A DNA stretch of 64,000 nt from Mobula hypostoma (GCF_963921235.1 NC_086098.1:82646001-82710000), one strand, 5' to 3'. Counted from the stretch's first letter, positions 50,340-61,812 are shown. Notes: a model not told the origin generated them from the letters alone. Numbers and translations: made by a program.

Positions 50340-53105
50340 TCATAAAGTATATCCAGGAAGCTTGTTGGCTACTAGTTCAGAAATATGTCTGCATTCATTA
50401 ACTATTCCTGTGCTTCCCAATTCATTAATTTCATCTGTTTGAATATCCTTTGCAGTTATGCCAAGTCCACTGCAGACGAGATCAAACTCACTGGATGGTG
50501 CGTAAGAGCTCACCTGAGATATCCCCAAAGACTGGCTCTCCTCCAGTAACCTGTGACCATTCCTTGAACTTGAAAGTTGAAGGACCTCAGGGCTAGCTCG
50601 ATTGATGTCAAATCCAGAATCTGACTGAACAATTGACTTAAGTTGTTTCTCAGTCTCTTGTTTGTTTGATGGGTTCAGTATTTTTTTCGGTTGATTTTCC
50701 TCTGTCAAGCTGGTTGCTTCTTCAGATAGATTTGAGGTTGTTGAAGACAATGTCATTCTCTGATGGTGACTACTTACAAGACTTGTACCTTTTAATGATT
50801 GAATTGGAGATTGCTTAGAGAGTGCCAGCAGTGGGACTGAATCATCTTCTGTCTCACTTTGAGCTGCCCCCTGATTGTCACTGGAATATTTGGAAAGGCT
50901 CGAATCCAATTCATTGTTAGAACATCTGTGCTTCACCCTAATAGTTTCAGCTTCTGGACTGCTACCTAAAGTATCTGCATATCTATTTGTAGGTTCAGGA
51001 CTGGTAAAATCTTCTGAGTTGCCAGTTGGTTCAGGGCTTGTGAAGTCCTCTGAATACTTGGGTTCATCACAGCTACTGTAAGAAATCTGTGCATCAACAT
51101 TTTCAACTATTATTGGATCACTAGTAATGCCAGGATTCATATTTGGAACATCCACTGCTTTACAATAAATCTCATTCACACTGCGGTCAGAATCATGGTT
51201 GATTATTTCAGGCAGTCTGACTTTTATATCTTTTTGGTAAAGGTTCCTGTCATTAGCCATCTGTAAATCTGAAATCTCCACATTGTAATCTAGTGGGCCT
51301 GGAGGTCGAACAGATGTCTTTCCTGTTCTAGTGGCACTTCCCCGTCTCAAAGTTGCTTCAAAGCTATTATTATCCATAAGCTTTCCACTTCTCTGGACAT
51401 TTGAAGGATAAGCAGTGTCAGGTTTGATGCTGCTTTGAATCAATGTTTCAGCGTTTACTTTAGCTCTGCCACCAGAAAGTTGTTGGCCTTTTTGAAGAGT
51501 TGAAGAACTCCTTTCCCCTTTGCCTTCACGACATTTTTGACCAATCTTCTCTTTCAGTTGTTTCAATTGTCTTCTTCTGGACAACTCTTTCTGTTCATGC
51601 ACTATCAACATGCCTGGATTTGTCTGTTGGAGCCTTAACCGTAATGTATTTGTTAACCCATACATCAACTTTCTTTTGGGATGTTCCAAATCTTTCTTTG
51701 CATTACATCGCCTTGGGTTATTTTCTTTATCAAAGTTTCTAGGAGATACAGGTTGCTTTTGAACTTCTTTCTGCTGCTTAAAATGTGAATTAGATTGTTG
51801 TATTGTTGATTTGGTTGGTTCATAAAATTCCAGTGAATCATGCTTCAAATTACTATAAAGCCAAGCAAGCTGAGGATGAACAACGAGAGGAATCTGCTGA
51901 GGTAACTGCTCATGATGTAGCAAAGAAAGTTCCAGTAGGAGTGCGTTCAGCAGAGGCAACTGTCTGATGGTATTATATGCATCAGAATTGGCAGGACTCT
52001 TTTGAACTTGTTTTTTTAATGTACCTGTTGCTTCTGAGTGACCTTTGGGCAACTTAAAATCACTTTGGTTCATGTTGAACAATTCTTCACTTTCATCTGA
52101 ATCCAGCTCCTCAAGAAGAGCTGACTCTTCCTCAGGCTCCATTGTTTTCCACATTTCAGAGACCTTCTCTTTGGGCCCTTCCTTTGATTGGCTGTAGTAC
52201 ATAGGGGGTGGACAAAAAACATTGTCCACTTTGATATCCACAGTAGGTTCGAATTTCAGAACCTGTTGTTTAATCTTAGATGCTGCTTTTGCTAATGTGT
52301 TCAGCTTATGGTCCCCCTTTAAAACAGAAATAATAACAGGCTCTTTGATCTGTTCAAACTGTCTACCTTCAACAGCCTGGTCACCAGAAATGTGGTTGGG
52401 GTACTTTTCAGAGTCAGTCGGAATGTGTCCAGTGCCTTGATCTGCCACCTTCTCATTCTCCCCTTGTTCTGGCACCTGTCCTTCACTGGGCAGGTGTGCA
52501 AAGTCCGTGTTTTGCATTTCAGCCTTCAGGACCTGGTTTTTTGGAATATGCGGCAGCAAACCAACTCCCAAACTCATAAGTCTATATCCTGCCGATATTT
52601 GGCCAATCTCGACACCCATCAGATTATAAAGAGGGTACAGGCCCCTCTTCCCTTGCATGGATGGTGTTGTAATGCCGCGTCCCTCTACATCCAATCTGAT
52701 TTTCTCCACGGCATTCGCCATCGAGATCAGGCAACTTCCCACCAATTTGGGTACTTGCTGTGACACGTCTAGTAGCATGGCGTACAGAGGGGTGTTGGTC
52801 AGATGGCGGTGAAGGGTTGACATCCCCATCTTGAACAGGCAGGACTTGCCTTTATTGAAAGTGATGCCAGTGCGGGCCCCCGTTCGCACGGGTGCCTGTC
52901 TCTCCTGCCCACGCTCCCAGCTCCGCCGCAGGGCTTCCGCTCGCTGCGGCTCGGTCTGATGGACCAAGAGTGTGGGGAAGTCCAGCAGTCTGAAGGCCAC
53001 CGCCAGCAAAGGGCCGGGCTCAGGCTGGGTTTCAGGTCCAACGTTCACGTAGTCCACTAACAGTTCCAAGGAGAACAGCGTCTCCACTTTGGCGGCTGTA
53101 TCCAT
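50340..53105 (-). CDS. MAP10: MAP10 (microtubule-associated protein 10, KIAA1383), single coding exon, 921 aa
   Basis: Strong Kozak actaccATGG at 53105. MAP10 hallmarks present: LFSLELLVD, AVAFRLLDFPTLLV, GKSCLF, QLPLLNALLLELSLL, HPQLAWLY (HPHLAWLY-type motif), LMYGLTNTLRLRLQQTNP, YSEDF, C-terminal ELVANKLPGYTL. Same orientation and upstream of NTPCR, as in human. The ORF-track start at 53702 is not an ATG. Confidence 0.95.
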   Translation of the reverse strand: MDTAAKVETLFSLELLVDYVNVGPETQPEPGPLLAVAFRLLDFPTLLVHQTEPQRAEALRRSWERGQERQAPVRTGARTGITFNKGKSCLFKMGMSTLHRHLTNTPLYAMLLDVSQQVPKLVGSCLISMANAVEKIRLDVEGRGITTPSMQGKRGLYPLYNLMGVEIGQISAGYRLMSLGVGLLPHIPKNQVLKAEMQNTDFAHLPSEGQVPEQGENEKVADQGTGHIPTDSEKYPNHISGDQAVEGRQFEQIKEPVIISVLKGDHKLNTLAKAASKIKQQVLKFEPTVDIKVDNVFCPPPMYYSQSKEGPKEKVSEMWKTMEPEEESALLEELDSDESEELFNMNQSDFKLPKGHSEATGTLKKQVQKSPANSDAYNTIRQLPLLNALLLELSLLHHEQLPQQIPLVVHPQLAWLYSNLKHDSLEFYEPTKSTIQQSNSHFKQQKEVQKQPVSPRNFDKENNPRRCNAKKDLEHPKRKLMYGLTNTLRLRLQQTNPGMLIVHEQKELSRRRQLKQLKEKIGQKCREGKGERSSSTLQKGQQLSGGRAKVNAETLIQSSIKPDTAYPSNVQRSGKLMDNNSFEATLRRGSATRTGKTSVRPPGPLDYNVEISDLQMANDRNLYQKDIKVRLPEIINHDSDRSVNEIYCKAVDVPNMNPGITSDPIIVENVDAQISYSSCDEPKYSEDFTSPEPTGNSEDFTSPEPTNRYADTLGSSPEAETIRVKHRCSNNELDSSLSKYSSDNQGAAQSETEDDSVPLLALSKQSPIQSLKGTSLVSSHHQRMTLSSTTSNLSEEATSLTEENQPKKILNPSNKQETEKQLKSIVQSDSGFDINRASPEVLQLSSSRNGHRLLEESQSLGISQVSSYAPSSEFDLVCSGLGITAKDIQTDEINELGSTGIVNECRHISELVANKLPGYTL

Positions 53106-53109
53106 GGTA

Positions 53110-54000
53110 GTTGCTTTGCCCCTGGTGGCACCGGCGTTGGCAGAACCGGTCCCCACAAACGGATTACATCGGACACCTTGGCAACACCGCACTACAAGTA
53201 AACGCGGTACTTTGAGCGCAATGAAGTCTGGGGGCTGTAGTCCTTCAGCGCAGTTACCTTCATCGCTCTTTTGACTCCAACTCCCATCCTGCCTCTGGAC
53301 TTCATCTTGTCCATTTGAGCAAAAGGAGCGGGCGCGTGGACGATGGCAGACGTTTGACCAAGAGAAAACCGTGGGTGGTGTCTCGTTACAGACATGTAGG
53401 ATAGACCAATGCTGTGAGGGGCAAAGCCAGCGGTTGACCAATGGGAGAGCATCCAAAGCCAAAGGACAGCGAATAGAAAAAAGGAGTACGGACCAAAGAC
53501 AGCCAATAGGGAGGAGGGCAGGGCTAACGATGGCCAATGGGTGGAGAGAAGGACCAAATTTCATCCAATCGAGGAAGAGTGAGGGGCCCAGAACAGCCAA
53601 TGGGAGGAAGGAAGAGCCGGCGGGCGAGGGGGTGGAACATTGGTCGCCAGGTTGTGTTGAGGTGCGGGAGAATGTGAAAAGTTTCCAGCCTGCTGGCCGC
53701 AAGAGGTGGTGCTGCGAACCTGGCTTGCGAGCGGTAGCGGGATCTTTGATTCACTGTCTGTCCCATGGTGTGGATTGTGCAGAAGGTCTCCTCGCGTGCA
53801 CGTGCGGCTCGGCCCCGCGGCTGTCAGGTAAGAGAGGTGGTGGTAGCGGAGGGGGAGTGAGGAGCCCTGGGCTTGTTGACAAGTTGAAGGTCGTAGAGTC
53901 GGTGCTGGGTCTCAGGCTGTCCGTTAGTACACTTGCAGACCGTTGGAAGTATTTCCCTCCTTCACGCCATCCTGCCCCCCGACACAACTCGGACCCTCCC
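53110..54000. promoter_or_regulatory. CpG-island, probably bidirectional promoter (MAP10 and a plus-strand transcript)
   Basis: CCAAT at 53406, 53438, 53503, 53534, 53565, 53597 (CGAAT at 53470); ZNF143/SBS-like ACTACAGCCCCCAGA on minus 53241-53227; X-box-like GTTGCCAAGG on minus near 53185-53176; E-box CACGTG at 53799-53804; CpG rich. Confidence 0.8.
53650..53827 (+). other. Candidate first (probably non-coding) exon of a gene divergent from MAP10
   Basis: GC-rich segment just downstream of the CCAAT array, ending in a strong donor CAG|GTAAGA at 53827/53828. The start is approximate and the identity is not determinable here. Confidence 0.5.
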
Positions 54001-56414
54001 TCACCCCCACCATTTTAGTGCACCCCCCCGGCCCATCTTCAGCCCAAACTAACCACCGCCCACTCCCGAAAAATGCCCTCTCTTTCAATCCCTTCACCTC
54101 CCTTCTCTCAAATATCTGCCGAAATACCTCAGAACATGTTCGTACATCTCGTCTGCGCCTGCCATTCTTTAGTTGCCTCCCTGGCAAGGGATGCGACTTT
54201 CCTCTCTTTCCCCGAACCGTTCACCAATGCAACCCCCGTCTGAAAAATGCTTTCCTTTCTTCACACCCCCTCATCTCCCGGATCTGAGATAAAATTCCTA
54301 GCAATCATGTCTAATCCTTCTCGCCCCAAAAAATTGTTCAAATTCCGCCTCCCACCCCCATCTCCTCTCAAAAGGCAGTTCGCACCCTCCCCCACTGCAA
54401 AAATATCATTAGCAGATCAGCCTCCCCCTCTTCCCCCAAGGCAGGATAACAACCCGTCGTCTTGCGGGTGGTTGTGTTCTTGGTGAAGCCGAATGGGCTG
54501 CATGTTGCGATCGCGGGACCCTTCCGTGAAGCCGGCAGGCTTTGGGGTCAGGTGCTATTCTCGGTTCCGCAAGCGGACGGCAGCCGGCCAATTATGTTGT
54601 GTGTGAAATACTCCTCCTTTCTACTCTAAATGAAATCAAACTGGGAATGAACAAAAGGGTTTGTGTCCCGTTCTCTAAATCCAGAAGATTTGGGCTCCCC
54701 TCAATTACCTTCAAACTTCAGGATTTTGAGAATAAAAATCAAGTATATCATTGATTGTGTATGTGCAATAATATATTTAATTCGATGCCATTGTTCACGG
54801 CGCGTGTACTACGGAGTTCTACTGAGAACCTAATTGCGCGTCGCTGTTTCTCTGGAAGTTGTAGCGATCGGTTGATTTGTTGTGGAATTGGATTTGTTGA
54901 TTTCTTTTCTGTCTTCTAACTTTATCCGCTAGATGGCTTTGCATGACACAATGGTCAAGGATTTTGGGTTCACTTTGTACGGAAACACTTCCTACATATT
55001 TATTTGGTCTGAGCTGTTTACTTTTTTTTGAAGATTTTTAATATATTGCTTATATGTGTAAATCTACAATGAAGCTATGACCATTTTCTGAAAGTTAGTT
55101 TCAATTATAAATGTTTTTGCAGCTCTAAGAGACGGGAAAGAATAAAACGAGCGCTGCAGTGCATTTCGTGTTGTTGATCAATACCCTCATCAAGTTTACC
55201 AGCTGTTTCAGTGAAAATATTAATATCGTATATCATCTTCACTGTTGTTTACTGGGATATATCAGTCTCCACAGTTAACTCATTGTAATATCTGGGACGA
55301 AAATATCCTCTTCCAGCTCGAAATTATAACGCTGTCACTCACTAAGAACAATGTAGTCGATTATTTTGGTTGGTCATTTACAATTTACACAAACAATGGC
55401 TCTGGAGGAAAATTTTTAAAAATCTAAGAATACAATGTGCCTGATTTCTGAGGTGATGATTTCGGAAATAGTGTTGGGCTCTTTCATTCTATGCAGTTAC
55501 TACTGGCAGTGTTTGTCATGGTAACATTACAGAAGGTTTTTGCCTTCATAGAAGGGTATTGGTTAATAACCTTGTTTCTTGTGATTGATCACCTATTGTG
55601 ATCATGTGTAATAAATTGGTAGGCATGAATTATGAGTTGAATATGAAAACTATTGCAGTGCTTTAGGTACTCTAAATAGTTTACCATCTGTATATATGAC
55701 ATTTGACATAGTTGTGCAAAAATTATTCTAGATAGAAGCAAATTACTTTATAATATTGTAATAAGGTTTTGTCCACTTTGGAGTGAATACATTTAACAAA
55801 TTGCATTGCTGGAACCAAAATATTTGACACAATTTATACATGAACACGTGTAGCATGAAGGTAAATGGTCAGTCTCTGGAAGTCAATGTAAATTGTTTGA
55901 TTACTGACATTTTTGAACATGCTAAATAAAAAGGCACTCAAATATCAAAACTGTTCTTACATTAAAGAAAAAAACATTCATGTGACCTTGTTATTGTCTG
56001 GTAAAGCTGGTCTTACTGTGTGATGCTTCCTTATTTTAATACAACAGCTGTTGAAAAATTATTCCGAAGTGCTGAAGGCGAAAAGGTTATCCTTGATGTT
56101 CTGCTGGCCTAAGTAAGCTCAGTCTTTTGGATTTAGAAGTTGTCAGGGCAACGGTTGATTATCTCCAGTCTTCAATTGCTTCCATTCATTGAGTGTCTTG
56201 CTCAACAGCAGAGTTGCCAACGATGAGATCTATGACGATGGCTGTGTAAATGTGCCCTGTAACTAAAGAAATTCTTTCATTTGGTAGTATTGAAAAGTGA
56301 TCTCAATTTTGCTTTATTTGAGTAAAATGTTTATGGTTAATGTTTCAATTTTTAAAAATGGCTAAAATAGTTCTTTCAACCCTGGGTACAGTAGAAAGTT
56401 TCTCCAGGCTTGGA

Positions 56415-59039: not shown

Positions 59040-61812
59040 AGCAGTGGGTCGCTACAGCGAAGAAGAGTTTTGGCCAGCGGCCAACCTGGACATCTGAGGT
59101 TTTGAGAGGAGGCAGACTTCAATTAGGTTCACTGCCCCAGTACAAAAGGCAGCAGCGGGTGGCTACAGCATAACAAGAGCTTTGACCAGTGACCAATCGG
59201 CACTGGGATTGATTGATGGGAGGTGGGGCAAGCACAGCAGCTGTCCTCTGAGTGGACAGAGTCAAGACTGGTGATCTTGAGGCTAAAGCTCTTTGAGGCT
59301 TTAGTGAAGAGAGGCATCAGTCAGAGAAAGCAAAGGAAAGAAAAGCTGAAGGTTTTTTTCCCCCTTCTTTATATCTGGGATGTGGGAAGGCAGTGAGACC
59401 TCTGGTGTCCCTGATGACTACAACTGCAAGGTGTATCCAGCTGCAGCTTCTAACAAACTGTGTTAAGGAGTTGGAGCTGGAACTGCATGAATCTGAATCA
59501 TCTAGGAGGCTGTGGGGGTGATAGAACATGTAGAGAGGTAGTAACACTCAAGGTGCAGGACACAGGAAACTGGGTGACAGTCAGGAAAGGAAAAGAGGTT
59601 ATGAAATCAGGGCAGAATACCCCTATGGCCATCCCCCTCATCAATAGGTATATTAATTATTATTTTGGATACCATTTGGGGAGATGACCTAACAGAGGAA
59701 AGTCACAGTGGTCAGATCTTTGGCACTGAGTCTGCCTCTGACTCAGAAGGGAAGTGAGAAGAAGAGACACACTGTGGTGATAGGTGATTTGTTAGGGGAA
59801 TGGACAGGAGGTTCTGTGCTTGAAAATGACAATCCTGGATGATATTTTGCCTCCATATGCTAGTGGCTAGTGAGGCCAAAATTAGGAAGATTATACAGTT
59901 TAATACGTAGCTAAGGAATTGGTGTAGGAGGGAGGGCATAAGAATTTTGGATCATTGGGCTTTCTTCCAGGGAAGGGAGATTCTGTACAGAAGAGATGGC
60001 TGGCACCTGAACTGGATGGGTCTAATATCCAAGCAGGAAGGTTTGTTAATGTGGGAAGGTGGGGATTGCGAATATCCGGTTGGTGCTGCATTCCAGGAGG
60101 GGAACTTTCTGGAGTGCCCTCGAGATTGCCTTTTAGAGCAGCTTGTGGTTGAGCCCACCAGACGACCAGCTATTCTGCAGTGGCTGTTGAATAATGAACC
60201 AGAATTGATTAGAGGGCTTCAGGTAAAAGAACCCTTTGGGGAAAGTGATCATAGTATGATCAAATTAACCTTGAAATTTGAGAAGGAGAAGGTAAGGTCA
60301 GATGTATCAGTATTACAGTGGAGTAATGGGAATTGCAGAGGCATGAAAGAAGAGATGGCCAGAAATGATTGGGGAAAAAGAACTGCCAGGTATGGTGGTG
60401 GAGCAGCAGTGGCTAGAACTTCCAGAAGCAATTTGGAAGGCACAGGATATATACACCCCAAAGAGGAAGAAGTATTCTAAAGGAAAGATGATATAACTGT
60501 GGCTAACAATGAGGTTTCAGGGTACTTGGAGATATATGATAAAATAGCCTGTAATCAGCATCATTTCCTCATGGGGAAATCTTGCCTGACAAATCTGTTG
60601 GAATTCTTTGGAGAAATATCAAGCAGGATAGATAAAAGAGAATCTGTTGATGTTGTGTACTTGGATTTTCAGAAGGATTTTGAAAAGTTGCCACAACATG
60701 AGGATGTTTATCAAGCTACAAGCCTTACAAGAAAGATTCTAGCATGGATAAAGCAGTGACTGATTGGCAGGAAGCAAAGAGTGGGAATAAAGCGAGCCTT
60801 TTCTGGTTGGCTGCCAGTGACTAGTGGTGTTCCACAGGGGTCTGTGTAGGGACTGATTCTCTTACATTTGTATGTTGATGGTTTGAACGGAATTGATGGT
60901 TTGTTGCAAAGTTTGCAGACGATGTGAGGATAAGTGGCGAGGCAGGTAGTTTTGAGGAAATAGAGCAGCTACAGAGTGGCTTAGATTGGGAAAATGGACA
61001 AAGAAATGGCAGATGGAATACAGTGTCAGGAAGTGCATGGTCAGGAAGTTTGGTAGAAGGAATGCAAGAAACTAGTTTCTAAATGGAGAGAAAATACTGA
61101 AAGCTGAGGCGCAAAATGACATGGGAGTCCTTGTGCAGGGTTCATTAAATGTTAATTTGCAGCTTAAGTCTGTGGTAAGGAAGGCAAATGAAATGTTAGC
61201 ATTCATTTCAAGGGGACTAATACCAAGCATGTAATGTTGAAATTTTATACAGTATTGGTGAGGCCTCACTTAGAGTATTGTGAGCAGTTTTGGGCCCCTT
61301 ATCTCAGAAGGGATGTGCTGAAACTGGAGAGGGTTCAAAGGAGGTTCACAAAAATGATTCCAGGATTGAATGGCTTGTCATGTGAAGAGTATTTGATGGC
61401 TCTGGGCCTGTATTCATTAGAATTCAGAAGAATGAGGAGTGACCTGATTAAAACCTATCGAATGTTGAAAGGCCTTGGTGGAATGGATGTGGAAATGGTG
61501 GGAGAGCCTAAGACCAGAGGACACAGCCTCAGGATAGAGGGCTGTCCTTTTAGAACAGAGATGAGGAAGAAGTTCTTTAGCCAGAGAATGGTGAATATGT
61601 GAAATTCTTTGGCACAGGCAGCTGTGGAGGCCAAGTCATTATGTATATTTAAAGCAGAGATTGATAGATTTTTGATTGGTCAGGGCATGAAGAGATATGG
61701 GGAGAAAGCAGGAGACTGGGGCTGAGAGGAAAATTGGATCAGTTACGATGAAACGGCAGAGCAGACTTGATGGACCAAATGGCCTAATTCTGCTCCTGTA
61801 CCTTATGGTTTT
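59040..61812 (+). mobile_element. CR1 LINE retaining both ends but with large internal deletions; same family as 9140-14118
   Basis: 5' UTR ctgagtggaca.agtca...ctctttgaggct shared with 9147-9198; ORF1, EN (GESDHSMI) and RT (KSCLTNLLEFF, YLDFQK, LVRPHLEYC) remnants; 3' tail. Confidence 0.9.

What the first reader, a model, noticed from the sequence alone, without database searches (positions are those of the whole stretch)
53400..53645. Seven CCAAT-type boxes phased at three helical turns in the MAP10 promoter
Seen: CCAAT starts at 53406, 53438, (CGAAT 53470), 53503, 53534, 53565, 53597. Spacings are 32, 32, 33, 31, 31, 32 bp, all on one strand, mostly with NF-Y-type flanks (R-CCAAT-SR). Spacers are purine-rich and only loosely similar. 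An inverted ATTGG sits at 53639. Established: ~32-bp-spaced CCAAT boxes bind NF-Y in G2/M promoters such as cyclin B2 and CDC25C, usually two or three boxes, and NF-Y is enriched at bidirectional promoters. Inference: an old ~32-bp minisatellite retained for motif and spacing only, forming an unusually long NF-Y platform for a cell-division microtubule gene.
Basis: partly seen in the sequence, partly recalled or inferred. Interest (0 to 1): 0.7.

Follow-up and report, generated by a model that had tools for sequence, protein, structure and literature searches.

The report
Phased CCAAT-box array, ray MAP10/SIPA1L2 promoter
A stingray carries six intact CCAAT boxes (probable NF-Y sites) spaced every 32 bp, filling the gap between the start sites of two back-to-back genes (MAP10 and SIPA1L2); rays, sawfish, skates and electric rays share the array and have kept the five-letter motif while the spacers drifted, so it is a real, old, extreme example of a known promoter design.

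Summary
CCAAT lies on the + strand at 53406, 53438, 53503, 53534, 53565 and 53597, with an in-phase CGAAT at 53470. The mean period is 31.8 bp, about 3.0 helical turns, and this is far beyond chance.

The array fills the untranscribed 287-bp gap of a CpG-island bidirectional promoter. MAP10 RNA contigs (minus strand) reach 53347. A spliced plus-strand exon 1 starts at 53634-53678, and by synteny it belongs to SIPA1L2.

Unit-by-unit orthologues exist in sawfish, skate and electric ray. Two sharks and a chimaera have only two boxes, so the array arose by tandem duplication in the batoid stem.

Orthologous pentamers are 95-100% identical against 44-61% for spacers (Fisher p 1e-6 to 1e-8). Flanks fit the NF-Y matrix. 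This points to selection on the motif.

- Spacing conservation is not beyond neutral expectation.
- There is no CHR element, so the G2/M reading is unsupported.
- The ATTGG at 53639 is lineage-specific.

NF-Y binding itself is untested. I read this as a new, extreme variant of the known phased multi-CCAAT promoter, of moderate interest.

The parts
53398..53625 (+). The whole array: seven ~32-bp units U1-U7, purine-rich on the + strand
   Evidence: orthologous units in Pristis, Rhinoraja and Narcine
53406..53410 (+). U1 CCAAT (flanks GA_GC). It is the box nearest MAP10, 59 bp from the furthest MAP10 RNA contig end (53347)
   Evidence: CCAAT in Pristis and Rhinoraja, absent in Narcine
53438..53442 (+). 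U2 CCAAT (flanks GA_GG)
   Evidence: CCAAT in Pristis and Rhinoraja, CCAAC in Narcine
53470..53474 (+). U3 CGAAT, an anciently decayed box that keeps the register. It is CGAAT also in Pristis and Narcine, and is destroyed and replaced by a (GA)n run in Rhinoraja
53503..53507 (+). U4 CCAAT (flanks AG_AG)
   Evidence: CCAAT in all four batoids
53534..53538 (+). U5 CCAAT (flanks GG_GG)
   Evidence: CCAAT in Rhinoraja and Narcine; in Pristis the unit is duplicated, one copy CCAAA and one CCAAT
53565..53569 (+). U6 CCAAT (flanks AT_CG; T at -1 is suboptimal by the mammalian matrix)
   Evidence: CCAAT in all four batoids; PMC6843132 for the matrix rules
53597..53601 (+). U7 CCAAT (flanks AG_GG), the ancestral proximal box. 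It sits 72-74 bp upstream of the conserved GAATGTGAAAA landmark in stingray, sawfish, skate and both sharks (65 bp in electric ray, 121 bp in chimaera)
53639..53643 (-). It is not conserved (ATCGG in sawfish and skate, ATGGG in electric ray) and lies inside the longest exon-1 RNA contig
53634..53828 (+). Exon 1 of the divergent transcript, assigned to SIPA1L2. RNA contigs start at 53634, 53674 and 53678, and all leave the genome at 53828 before a GT donor
   Evidence: tables 7, 8. Stegostoma has SIPA1L2 annotated head-to-head with MAP10, with its CDS starting in the homologous exon
53625..53715 (+). Deeply conserved block at the SIPA1L2 start, nearly invariant in rays and sharks and partly in chimaera
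53106..53347 (-). MAP10 5' untranslated region, minimum extent. RNA contigs end at 53206, 53310 and 53347
   Evidence: A skate transcript contig (L003) likewise stops just short of the array
50340..53105 (-). MAP10 coding sequence: a single exon of 921 aa, ATG at 53105
53274..53292 (+). ACTACA-N-TCCC type (ZNF143/SBS-like) motif. The stingray copy has one mismatch; the motif is intact in the six other chondrichthyans
52600..54650 (.). CpG island (GC 0.51-0.62, CpG observed/expected 0.6-0.87) that holds both starts. The array itself is the CpG-poorest part (0.38)

Best explanation
The stretch is the core of a shared, bidirectional CpG-island promoter. MAP10 is transcribed leftwards and SIPA1L2 rightwards.

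The ~290 bp between the two start regions is tiled by seven ~32-bp units, six of them with an intact CCAAT pentamer. The array arose in the stem lineage of rays and skates. An ancestral two-box promoter, still seen in sharks and chimaera, gained ~31-32-bp CCAAT-bearing units by tandem duplication.

Since then each unit has evolved on its own, with no homogenisation between units. Spacers drifted at about the neutral rate. Boxes were occasionally lost (U3 early; U2 in electric ray; one U5 copy in sawfish) or gained (a 62-bp dimer in sawfish; a 20-bp sub-repeat in skate). The pentamer and its NF-Y-type flanks stayed under purifying selection.

The most likely mechanism is inferred, not shown. 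Up to six NF-Y trimers bind side by side on one face of the helix, one per three turns. They keep the inter-start region free of nucleosomes and fix both start sites about 35-80 bp beyond the outermost boxes. Multiple redundant boxes would add activity and robustness.

The ~32-bp register is probably a legacy of the repeat unit. It happens to be the spacing at which neighbouring NF-Y complexes fit. Whether it is itself maintained by selection is unresolved.
For: Shown:
- Exact positions and non-random clustering and phasing.
- MAP10 identity.
- RNA contigs from two species cover MAP10 up to 53347 and a spliced plus-strand exon from 53634-53678 to 53828, with none across 53348-53633.
- Stegostoma has SIPA1L2 annotated head-to-head with MAP10, and its CDS starts in the exon homologous to the conserved block.
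- CCAAT arrays sit at the same place in Pristis (7 CCAAT, CGAAT and CCAAA), Rhinoraja (7 CCAAT and 5 CCAAC) and Narcine (4 CCAAT, CGAAT and CCAAC). Stegostoma, Heptranchias and Callorhinchus have only 2 boxes.
- Unit orthology is one to one. Non-core identity between stingray and sawfish units is 0.54-0.69 for matching units, against a mean of 0.39 between units within the stingray.
- Core identity is 0.95-1.00 against 0.44-0.61 for non-core positions in all six species pairs, Fisher p 3e-6 to 1e-8.
- Of the six stingray boxes, 5, 6 and 4 are retained in the three other batoids, against neutral expectations of 0.40, 0.29 and 0.27 per box (P = 0.041, 0.0006 and 0.048).
- In a sister species at 1.8% divergence, 7 substitutions and 1 deletion fall in the array and none in a pentamer.
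- The consensus over 24 batoid boxes is C(-3), purine(-2, 24 of 24), G(-1), CCAAT, G, G. This agrees with the mammalian NF-Y rules: purine at -1, C or G at +1, purine at +2, every core base mandatory (PMC6843132).

Established knowledge:
- CCAAT pairs and triplets 31-33 bp apart bind NF-Y (PMC3287175, PMC4982600).
- NF-Y keeps the nucleosome-depleted region open and blocks upstream ectopic initiation (PMC6624317).
Against: - No binding, accessibility or reporter data exist for any cartilaginous fish at this locus. NF-Y occupancy is inferred from sequence alone.
- Units were matched partly through their pentamers, which biases the core versus non-core contrast upwards. Order, diagonal identity and unanchored alignments agree with the matching all the same.
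- Species are not independent, so the p-values overstate the evidence.
- Contig ends are only approximate start sites.
- Three boxes have one non-preferred flank base.
- Spacing conservation is no better than neutral, and the skate tolerates 20-, 78- and 91-bp intervals. The 'same face of the helix' part may therefore be irrelevant to function.
Confidence: 0.7

Rival explanations
1. G2/M platform. The array would be an enlarged version of the cyclin B2 / CDC25C type module, giving MAP10 cell-cycle-periodic, DREAM/MMB-FOXM1-controlled expression.
For: - The 31-33-bp spacing equals that of cyclin B2 boxes (PMC3287175).
- MAP10 is a microtubule and cytokinesis protein (general knowledge; KIAA1383 appears in cytokinesis literature).
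Against: - None of the published CHR sequences (TTTGAA, TTTAAA, TAGGAA, CTTGAA, either strand) occurs between the MAP10 ATG and the SIPA1L2 donor in the stingray. The few hits in other species are not positionally conserved.
- The partner gene SIPA1L2 is not a mitotic gene.
- Phased CCAAT pairs also occur in housekeeping, histone and chromatin promoters (PMC4982600).
- The literature search found no data on MAP10 promoter regulation.
Confidence: 0.12
2. The conserved pentamers are read by something other than NF-Y. Candidates are NFI/CTF half-sites (GCCAA), another CCAAT-region binder, or a composite site with the second conserved element GCCA 19-22 bp downstream of each box.
For: - Several boxes read GCCAAT.
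- A second, weaker conserved element (G/C, C, A at +20 to +22; C in 19 of 24 at +21) recurs in every unit and has no assigned factor.
Against: - The T of CCAAT is invariant (24 of 24). The base before the first C is G in only 16 of 24 and is A, T or C elsewhere. That is the reverse of what an NFI half-site needs.
- There is no TTGGC partner half-site.
- The flank pattern fits the NF-Y matrix (PMC6843132).
Confidence: 0.1
3. Neutral remnant. A minisatellite happened to contain CCAAT and is simply decaying slowly in slowly evolving cartilaginous-fish genomes, with no function for the extra boxes.
For: - Chondrichthyan neutral DNA is still alignable across these species (77-83% identity in aligned introns).
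- Spacing conservation is within neutral expectation.
- Some boxes have decayed (U3, Narcine U2, one sawfish U5).
Against: - Pentamers are 95-100% identical while the adjacent spacers are 44-61% identical.
- All six stingray boxes are intact in the skate, where 0.29 per box is expected (P=0.0006).
- Units are not homogenised, so concerted evolution cannot explain the retention.
Confidence: 0.06

Closest known systems
Cyclin B2 / CDC25C / CDC2-type promoters (two or three CCAAT boxes ~33 bp apart plus CDE/CHR)
   Same: Same-strand CCAAT boxes at 31-33 bp with NF-Y-type flanks, close to the start site. In cyclin B2 the spacing is conserved across vertebrates (PMC3287175).
   Different: - Six intact boxes here instead of two or three.
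- No CHR.
- The promoter is bidirectional and the array reaches from one start site to the other.
- Cell-cycle control has not been shown.
[quoted passage not shown] TOP2B
   Same: A preferred distance of about 31-32 bp with weaker maxima every 10-11 bp, read as NF-Y complexes on one face of the helix (PMC4982600).
   Different: That class is defined as dimers. Here the same module is iterated six to seven times, and its tandem-duplication origin can be traced.
Human P4HB (protein disulfide isomerase) promoter with six CCAAT boxes
   Same: Six CCAAT elements within about 380 bp, each contributing to activity (PMC3500226, citing Tasanen et al. 1992).
   Different: - As far as I know it is not regularly phased. 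This is from recollection and was not checked here.
- It is not repeat-derived, and it is an ER-stress / housekeeping gene.
LTR12 / MER / RLTR10 retroviral LTRs with multiple CCAAT boxes bound by NF-Y
   Same: Repeat-borne clusters of good CCAAT boxes, more than 1 per 100 bp, bound by NF-Y (PMC12065363).
   Different: - Those are dispersed transposon copies that act mostly as enhancers or cryptic promoters.
- This is a single-locus array with no other copy of the unit in the 64-kb window. It lies inside a conserved host promoter and has been kept since the batoid orders diverged (roughly 200 million years by my recollection, not computed here).

Membership tests
NF-Y (CBF/HAP2-3-5) binding site | Intact CCAAT pentamer, every base required | tested here: met
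   Six exact CCAAT. CGAAT at 53470 fails and is counted as a dead box. Rule taken from PMC6843132.
NF-Y (CBF/HAP2-3-5) binding site | Flanks of the ~10-bp matrix: purines at -2 and -1, C or G at +1, purine at +2, T disfavoured | tested here: met
   Across 24 batoid boxes: purine at -2 in 24 of 24, G or A at -1 in 20 of 24, G or C at +1 in 20 of 24, G or A at +2 in 20 of 24. In the stingray, 3 of 6 fit R-CCAAT-SR fully and 3 miss one base. No formal PWM was available, so scoring was by consensus only.
NF-Y (CBF/HAP2-3-5) binding site | Position roughly 60-100 bp upstream of a start site | tested here: met
   U1 lies 59 bp from the furthest MAP10 RNA contig end. U7 lies 33-77 bp from the exon-1 contig starts. 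Contig ends are approximate. The positional rule is from general knowledge.
NF-Y (CBF/HAP2-3-5) binding site | Physical occupancy by the NF-YA/B/C trimer | not testable with these tools
   No ChIP, CUT&RUN or ATAC data could be reached.
G2/M CCAAT-CHR (DREAM / MMB-FOXM1) promoter | Two or more CCAAT boxes about 31-33 bp apart | tested here: met
   PMC3287175
G2/M CCAAT-CHR (DREAM / MMB-FOXM1) promoter | CHR element (TTTGAA, TTTAAA, TAGGAA or CTTGAA, either strand) near the start site and phylogenetically conserved | tested here: not met
   No hit in window 53106-53830. The scattered hits in Pristis, Stegostoma and Callorhinchus sit at non-homologous positions.
G2/M CCAAT-CHR (DREAM / MMB-FOXM1) promoter | Cell-cycle-periodic expression peaking in G2/M | not testable with these tools
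   No synchronised-cell data were available.
Bidirectional promoter | Two divergent start sites less than 1 kb apart, usually in a CpG island | tested here: met
   Minus-strand RNA reaches 53347 and plus-strand RNA starts at 53634, a gap of 287 bp. CpG island at about 52600-54650. The partner is named SIPA1L2 from the Stegostoma annotation and the conserved exon 1. SIPA1L2 coding exons were not seen inside the window.
Minisatellite / tandem repeat | Head-to-tail units with detectable sequence similarity | tested here: inconclusive
   TRF reports nothing at score 30 or above. Unit similarity outside the core is weak but above shuffles (0.41 against 0.32, p<0.001), with partial families of 66-76% identity. 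The tandem origin is clearest from the two alternating unit types and the recent 62-bp duplicate in Pristis.
Minisatellite / tandem repeat | Unit-number change between lineages | tested here: met
   2 boxes in sharks and chimaera; 7 units in stingray; 9 in sawfish; about 11 in skate with a 20-bp sub-repeat; 6 in electric ray. No change in unit number in a sister species at 1.8% divergence.

The most novel reading that the evidence does not exclude
The six in-phase boxes could assemble a fixed, nucleosome-like particle made of histone-fold NF-Y trimers. Each trimer bends DNA in the same direction every three turns. Such a particle would permanently replace the nucleosome between two divergent start sites and act as both spacer and barrier, setting where MAP10 and SIPA1L2 transcription begins. 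On this reading the tandem expansion in the batoid stem would be an evolutionary route to building such a particle, and the 31-32-bp register would be under selection in rays but relaxed in skates.
Probability: 0.15. Interest if true: 0.65.

Novelty: new variant of a known kind. Interest (0 to 1): 0.42.

Why it matters
This is a clean natural experiment on promoter grammar. The same promoter exists with two CCAAT boxes in sharks and chimaera and with four to seven in rays, sawfish and skates. Individual boxes can be traced unit by unit across the batoid orders.

It shows a cis-regulatory array built by tandem duplication and then held only at the five-letter motif and its immediate flanks. It also offers a direct way to ask whether NF-Y box number and helical register matter for start-site choice at a bidirectional promoter.

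It does not change what is known about NF-Y. Its value is as an extreme, datable example and a good substrate for reporter and footprinting tests.

Tried and rejected
- Tandem Repeats Finder at minimum score 30 found nothing. The array is too decayed for it.
- The look-up of encoding contigs returned no DNA for the closest relatives Hemitrygon akajei and Hypanus sabinus, nor for Scyliorhinus canicula, because the files were too large. Latimeria was not on record. Close-relative information therefore comes only from the coded sister species laid.
- The gar locus (L006) shares no alignable promoter with the stingray. It has an AT-rich region upstream of its MAP10 ATG, so bony fishes could not be compared.
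- Exon 2 of the plus-strand transcript (the loose end after 53828) is not in the window. SIPA1L2 is therefore named by synteny, not by coding sequence in this window.
- The unit consensus occurs nowhere else in the window, so there is no sign of a dispersed repeat family.
- Scans for CHR, E2F, GC-box, NRF1, CRE and TATA gave nothing in the stingray promoter.
- The test for selection on spacing was negative: it cannot be told apart from neutral indel drift.
- The scan's earlier notes hold no other CCAAT/NF-Y array in this genome.
- Literature searches found no paper on MAP10 or SIPA1L2 promoter structure and no report of a phased array of six or more boxes.
- I did not build an NF-Y position weight matrix from memory, because it would be unreliable.

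Full report
**1. What is in the sequence**

CCAAT lies on the + strand at 53406, 53438, 53503, 53534, 53565 and 53597. CGAAT lies in register at 53470, and one minus-strand CCAAT (ATTGG on the + strand) at 53639. The spacings are 32, 32, 33, 31, 31 and 32 bp. The mean period is 31.83 bp, or 3.03 turns at 10.5 bp per turn.

The window as a whole is poor in CCAAT: 152 found against about 203 expected. In 100 Markov simulations of the window the longest same-strand chain at 31-33 bp was at most 3, and the densest 200 bp held at most 5 boxes. The real values are an unbroken chain of 4, with 2 more in register across the CGAAT, and 6. From local composition, 0.33 boxes are expected in these 246 bp.

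Outside the pentamer the seven units are only 41% alike, against 32% for composition-matched shuffles (p<0.001). TRF sees no array. The repeat finder sees only partial families of 66-76% identity. The stretch is strongly purine-rich on the + strand.

**2. Where it sits**

The long minus-strand ORF with its ATG at 53105 is MAP10. It matches Pfam MAP10_N and HPHLAWLY. It is 91% and 89% identical to the proteins that NCBI names MAP10 in the stingrays Hemitrygon akajei and Hypanus sabinus, so the window comes from a stingray-like ray. The array lies in a CpG island at about 52600-54650.

I laid Logan contigs of three probable RNA runs (two from the window's species, one from a sister species) and one DNA run of that sister species on 52300-54300.
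- The MAP10 transcript contigs run up to 53206, 53310 and 53347.
- A plus-strand transcript starts at 53634, 53674 or 53678. In all three RNA runs it leaves the genome at 53828, directly before a GT, and continues in sequence that is not in the window.
- No RNA contig covers 53348-53633.

The array (53398-53625) is therefore the untranscribed 287-bp gap between two divergent start regions. U1 lies 59 bp from the furthest MAP10 contig end. U7 lies 33-77 bp from the exon-1 contig starts. Contig ends are only approximate start sites.

The divergent gene is SIPA1L2 by synteny. In the zebra shark locus L005 a 1742-residue Rap-GAP/PDZ/SPAR_C gene is annotated head-to-head with MAP10. Its CDS begins in the exon homologous to the window's exon 1.

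**3. Relatives**

I obtained MAP10 loci for five cartilaginous-fish orders plus chimaera and gar:
- sawfish Pristis (L001)
- skate Rhinoraja (L002)
- electric ray Narcine (L007)
- zebra shark Stegostoma (L005)
- cow shark Heptranchias (L008)
- chimaera Callorhinchus (L004)
- gar Lepisosteus (L006)

A block at the start of SIPA1L2 exon 1 (window 53625-53715) is nearly invariant in all rays and sharks and recognisable in the chimaera. I used its GAATGTGAAAA core as a landmark. Box positions relative to that landmark:

| Species | CCAAT and in-register variants |
|---|---|
| Stingray | -264, -232, (-200 CGAAT), -167, -136, -105, -73 |
| Sawfish | -328, -291, (-260 CGAAT), -228, (-197 CCAAA), -166, -135, -104, -73 |
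| Electric ray | (-215 CCAAC), (-183 CGAAT), -152, -127, -96, -65 |
| Skate | -357, -326, [dead unit plus a (GA)n run], -248, -228, -197, several CCAAC at 20-bp steps, -106, -74 |
| Zebra shark | -126, -72 |
| Cow shark | -122, -74 |
| Chimaera | -216, -121 |

The proximal box U7 is ancestral to cartilaginous fishes. The long array is shared by all four batoid orders and absent from sharks and chimaera. The simplest history is tandem duplication in the batoid stem lineage. The gar promoter is not alignable.

Units can be matched one to one. Non-core identity between stingray and sawfish units is 0.54-0.69 for matching units. The mean between units within the stingray is 0.39. This rules out homogenisation by gene conversion.

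The dead box U3 is CGAAT in stingray, sawfish and electric ray alike, so it was lost before those lineages split. The array also turns over:
- The sawfish duplicated the U5-U6 dimer (62 bp), and one U5 copy then became CCAAA.
- The skate amplified a 20-bp CCAAT/CCAAC sub-unit.
- The electric ray lost U1 and U2.

**4. Selection**

For orthologous units, the pentamers are 95-100% identical in every species pair. The 26 flanking and spacer positions are 44-61% identical (Fisher p between 3e-6 and 1e-8).

As a baseline I used SIPA1L2 intron 1 and the region 3' of MAP10. Ungapped identity there is 0.83, 0.78 and 0.77 to sawfish, skate and electric ray. That gives an expected pentamer survival of 0.40, 0.29 and 0.27. 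Observed survival of the six stingray boxes is 5, 6 and 4 (P = 0.041, 0.0006 and 0.048).

In the sister species (36 differences in 2001 bp), 7 substitutions and one 1-bp deletion fall within the array and none within a pentamer. On its own that is not significant.

Caveats apply. The species share history, and the units were matched partly by their pentamers. Even so, order, diagonal identity and the unanchored alignments agree. I conclude that the motif is under purifying selection and the spacers are not.

Spacing is a different matter. Neighbouring neutral DNA carries 2.7-3.7 indels per 100 bp. Simulation gives P=0.27 for at least 5 of 6 spacers staying within ±1 bp between stingray and sawfish, which is what is observed. 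The electric ray has a 25-bp interval and the skate has 20-, 78- and 91-bp intervals. The 31-33-bp register can therefore be explained as inheritance from the repeat unit. Selection on it is not shown, though it is not excluded either.

**5. What reads the boxes**

Over 24 intact batoid boxes the extended consensus is C(-3), purine(-2, 24 of 24), G(-1, 16 of 24), CCAAT, G(+1, 18 of 24), G(+2, 19 of 24). This matches the rules given for the mammalian NF-Y matrix: all five core bases mandatory, purine at -1, C or G at +1, purine at +2, T disfavoured (PMC6843132).

An NFI/CTF half-site (GCCAA) would need the preceding G and not the T. The data show the reverse.

A second, weaker conserved element (GCCA about 19-22 bp 3' of each box) remains unexplained.

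**6. How it likely works**

These points are established elsewhere:
- Neighbouring CCAAT boxes 31-33 bp apart are a recurrent NF-Y module. Cyclin B2 has three boxes about 33 bp apart, conserved among vertebrates (PMC3287175).
- Human promoter 'CCAAT dimers' peak at 31 bp, with echoes every 10-11 bp (PMC4982600).
- NF-Y keeps the region upstream of start sites nucleosome-free and prevents upstream ectopic initiation (PMC6624317).

My inference is that up to six NF-Y trimers line one face of the DNA across the whole inter-start gap. They would hold it open and define both starts, with redundancy among boxes. None of this binding has been observed in a cartilaginous fish.

**7. The G2/M reading**

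The cyclin B2 class is defined by CCAAT boxes plus a CHR. None of the four published CHR sequences, on either strand, occurs between the MAP10 ATG and the SIPA1L2 donor in the stingray. The isolated hits in other species are not at homologous positions. Phased CCAAT pairs also mark non-mitotic promoters (PMC4982600). I found no paper on MAP10 promoter control. The resemblance in spacing is real. Membership of the G2/M class is not supported.

**8. Details corrected**

- The ATTGG at 53639 reads ATCGG in sawfish and skate and ATGGG in electric ray, and it lies inside the longest exon-1 contig. It is a lineage-specific substitution, not a conserved eighth box.
- Six CCAAT boxes in one promoter are not unprecedented. 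Human P4HB has six in 378 nt, each contributing to activity (PMC3500226). CCAAT-rich LTRs are bound by NF-Y (PMC12065363).
- What I could not find described is a regularly phased run of six or seven.

**9. Verdict**

It is not supported on selected spacing, on G2/M class or on the inverted box.

I classify the array as a new, extreme variant of the known phased multi-CCAAT/NF-Y promoter. Interest is moderate. Its main value is as a traceable case of promoter evolution and a test bed for NF-Y box number and register.

Noticed in passing
window 53625-53715 (+): A roughly 90-bp block at the start of SIPA1L2 exon 1, centred on GGAGAATGTGAAAAGTTTCCAGCC, is nearly invariant in stingray, sawfish, skate, electric ray and two sharks, and recognisable in chimaera. 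It is far better conserved than the neighbouring sequence. Its function is unknown; it could be an initiator region, a 5'UTR element or a factor site.
   Followed up: partly
window 53274-53292 (+) and 53228-53245 (-): An ACTACA-N-TCCC motif (ZNF143/SBS-like) is intact in six of the seven cartilaginous fishes compared on the MAP10 side of the promoter; the stingray copy has one mismatch (ACTCCAACTCCC). A second, inverted copy sits about 40 bp closer to the MAP10 ATG. One MAP10 RNA contig ends at 53206, which hints at a second, downstream MAP10 start.
   Followed up: partly
window 53766-53828 (+): An ATG in good context opens a 21-codon frame that runs exactly to the exon-1 splice donor in batoids. 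The zebra shark gene model starts the SIPA1L2 CDS at a different ATG of the same exon, in another phase. It may be an alternative N-terminus or an upstream ORF.
   Followed up: no
each array unit, +19 to +22 after CCAAT (e.g. window 53429-53432, 53526-53529, 53557-53560): A second weakly conserved element (G/C-C-A; C in 19 of 24 units at +21) recurs once per unit across four batoid species. No factor has been assigned to it.
   Followed up: partly
L002 (Rhinoraja) and L001 (Pristis), inter-start region: Microsatellites have grown inside the promoter. The skate has a (GA)n run replacing dead unit U3, and the sawfish has a (CTG)n run in SIPA1L2 exon 1. The skate also amplified a 20-bp CCAAT/CCAAC sub-repeat.
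   Followed up: partly
window 59947-61602 (+): Three broken ORFs look like reverse-transcriptase fragments of a retroelement inside SIPA1L2 intron 1. This was judged by eye and no domain search was run.
   Followed up: no
L008 (Heptranchias), SIPA1L2 intron 1 side: A tandem repeat of roughly 30 bp (GGGAGGGGCAGGACAA followed by a C run) lies a few hundred bp beyond exon 1 in the cow shark only.
   Followed up: no
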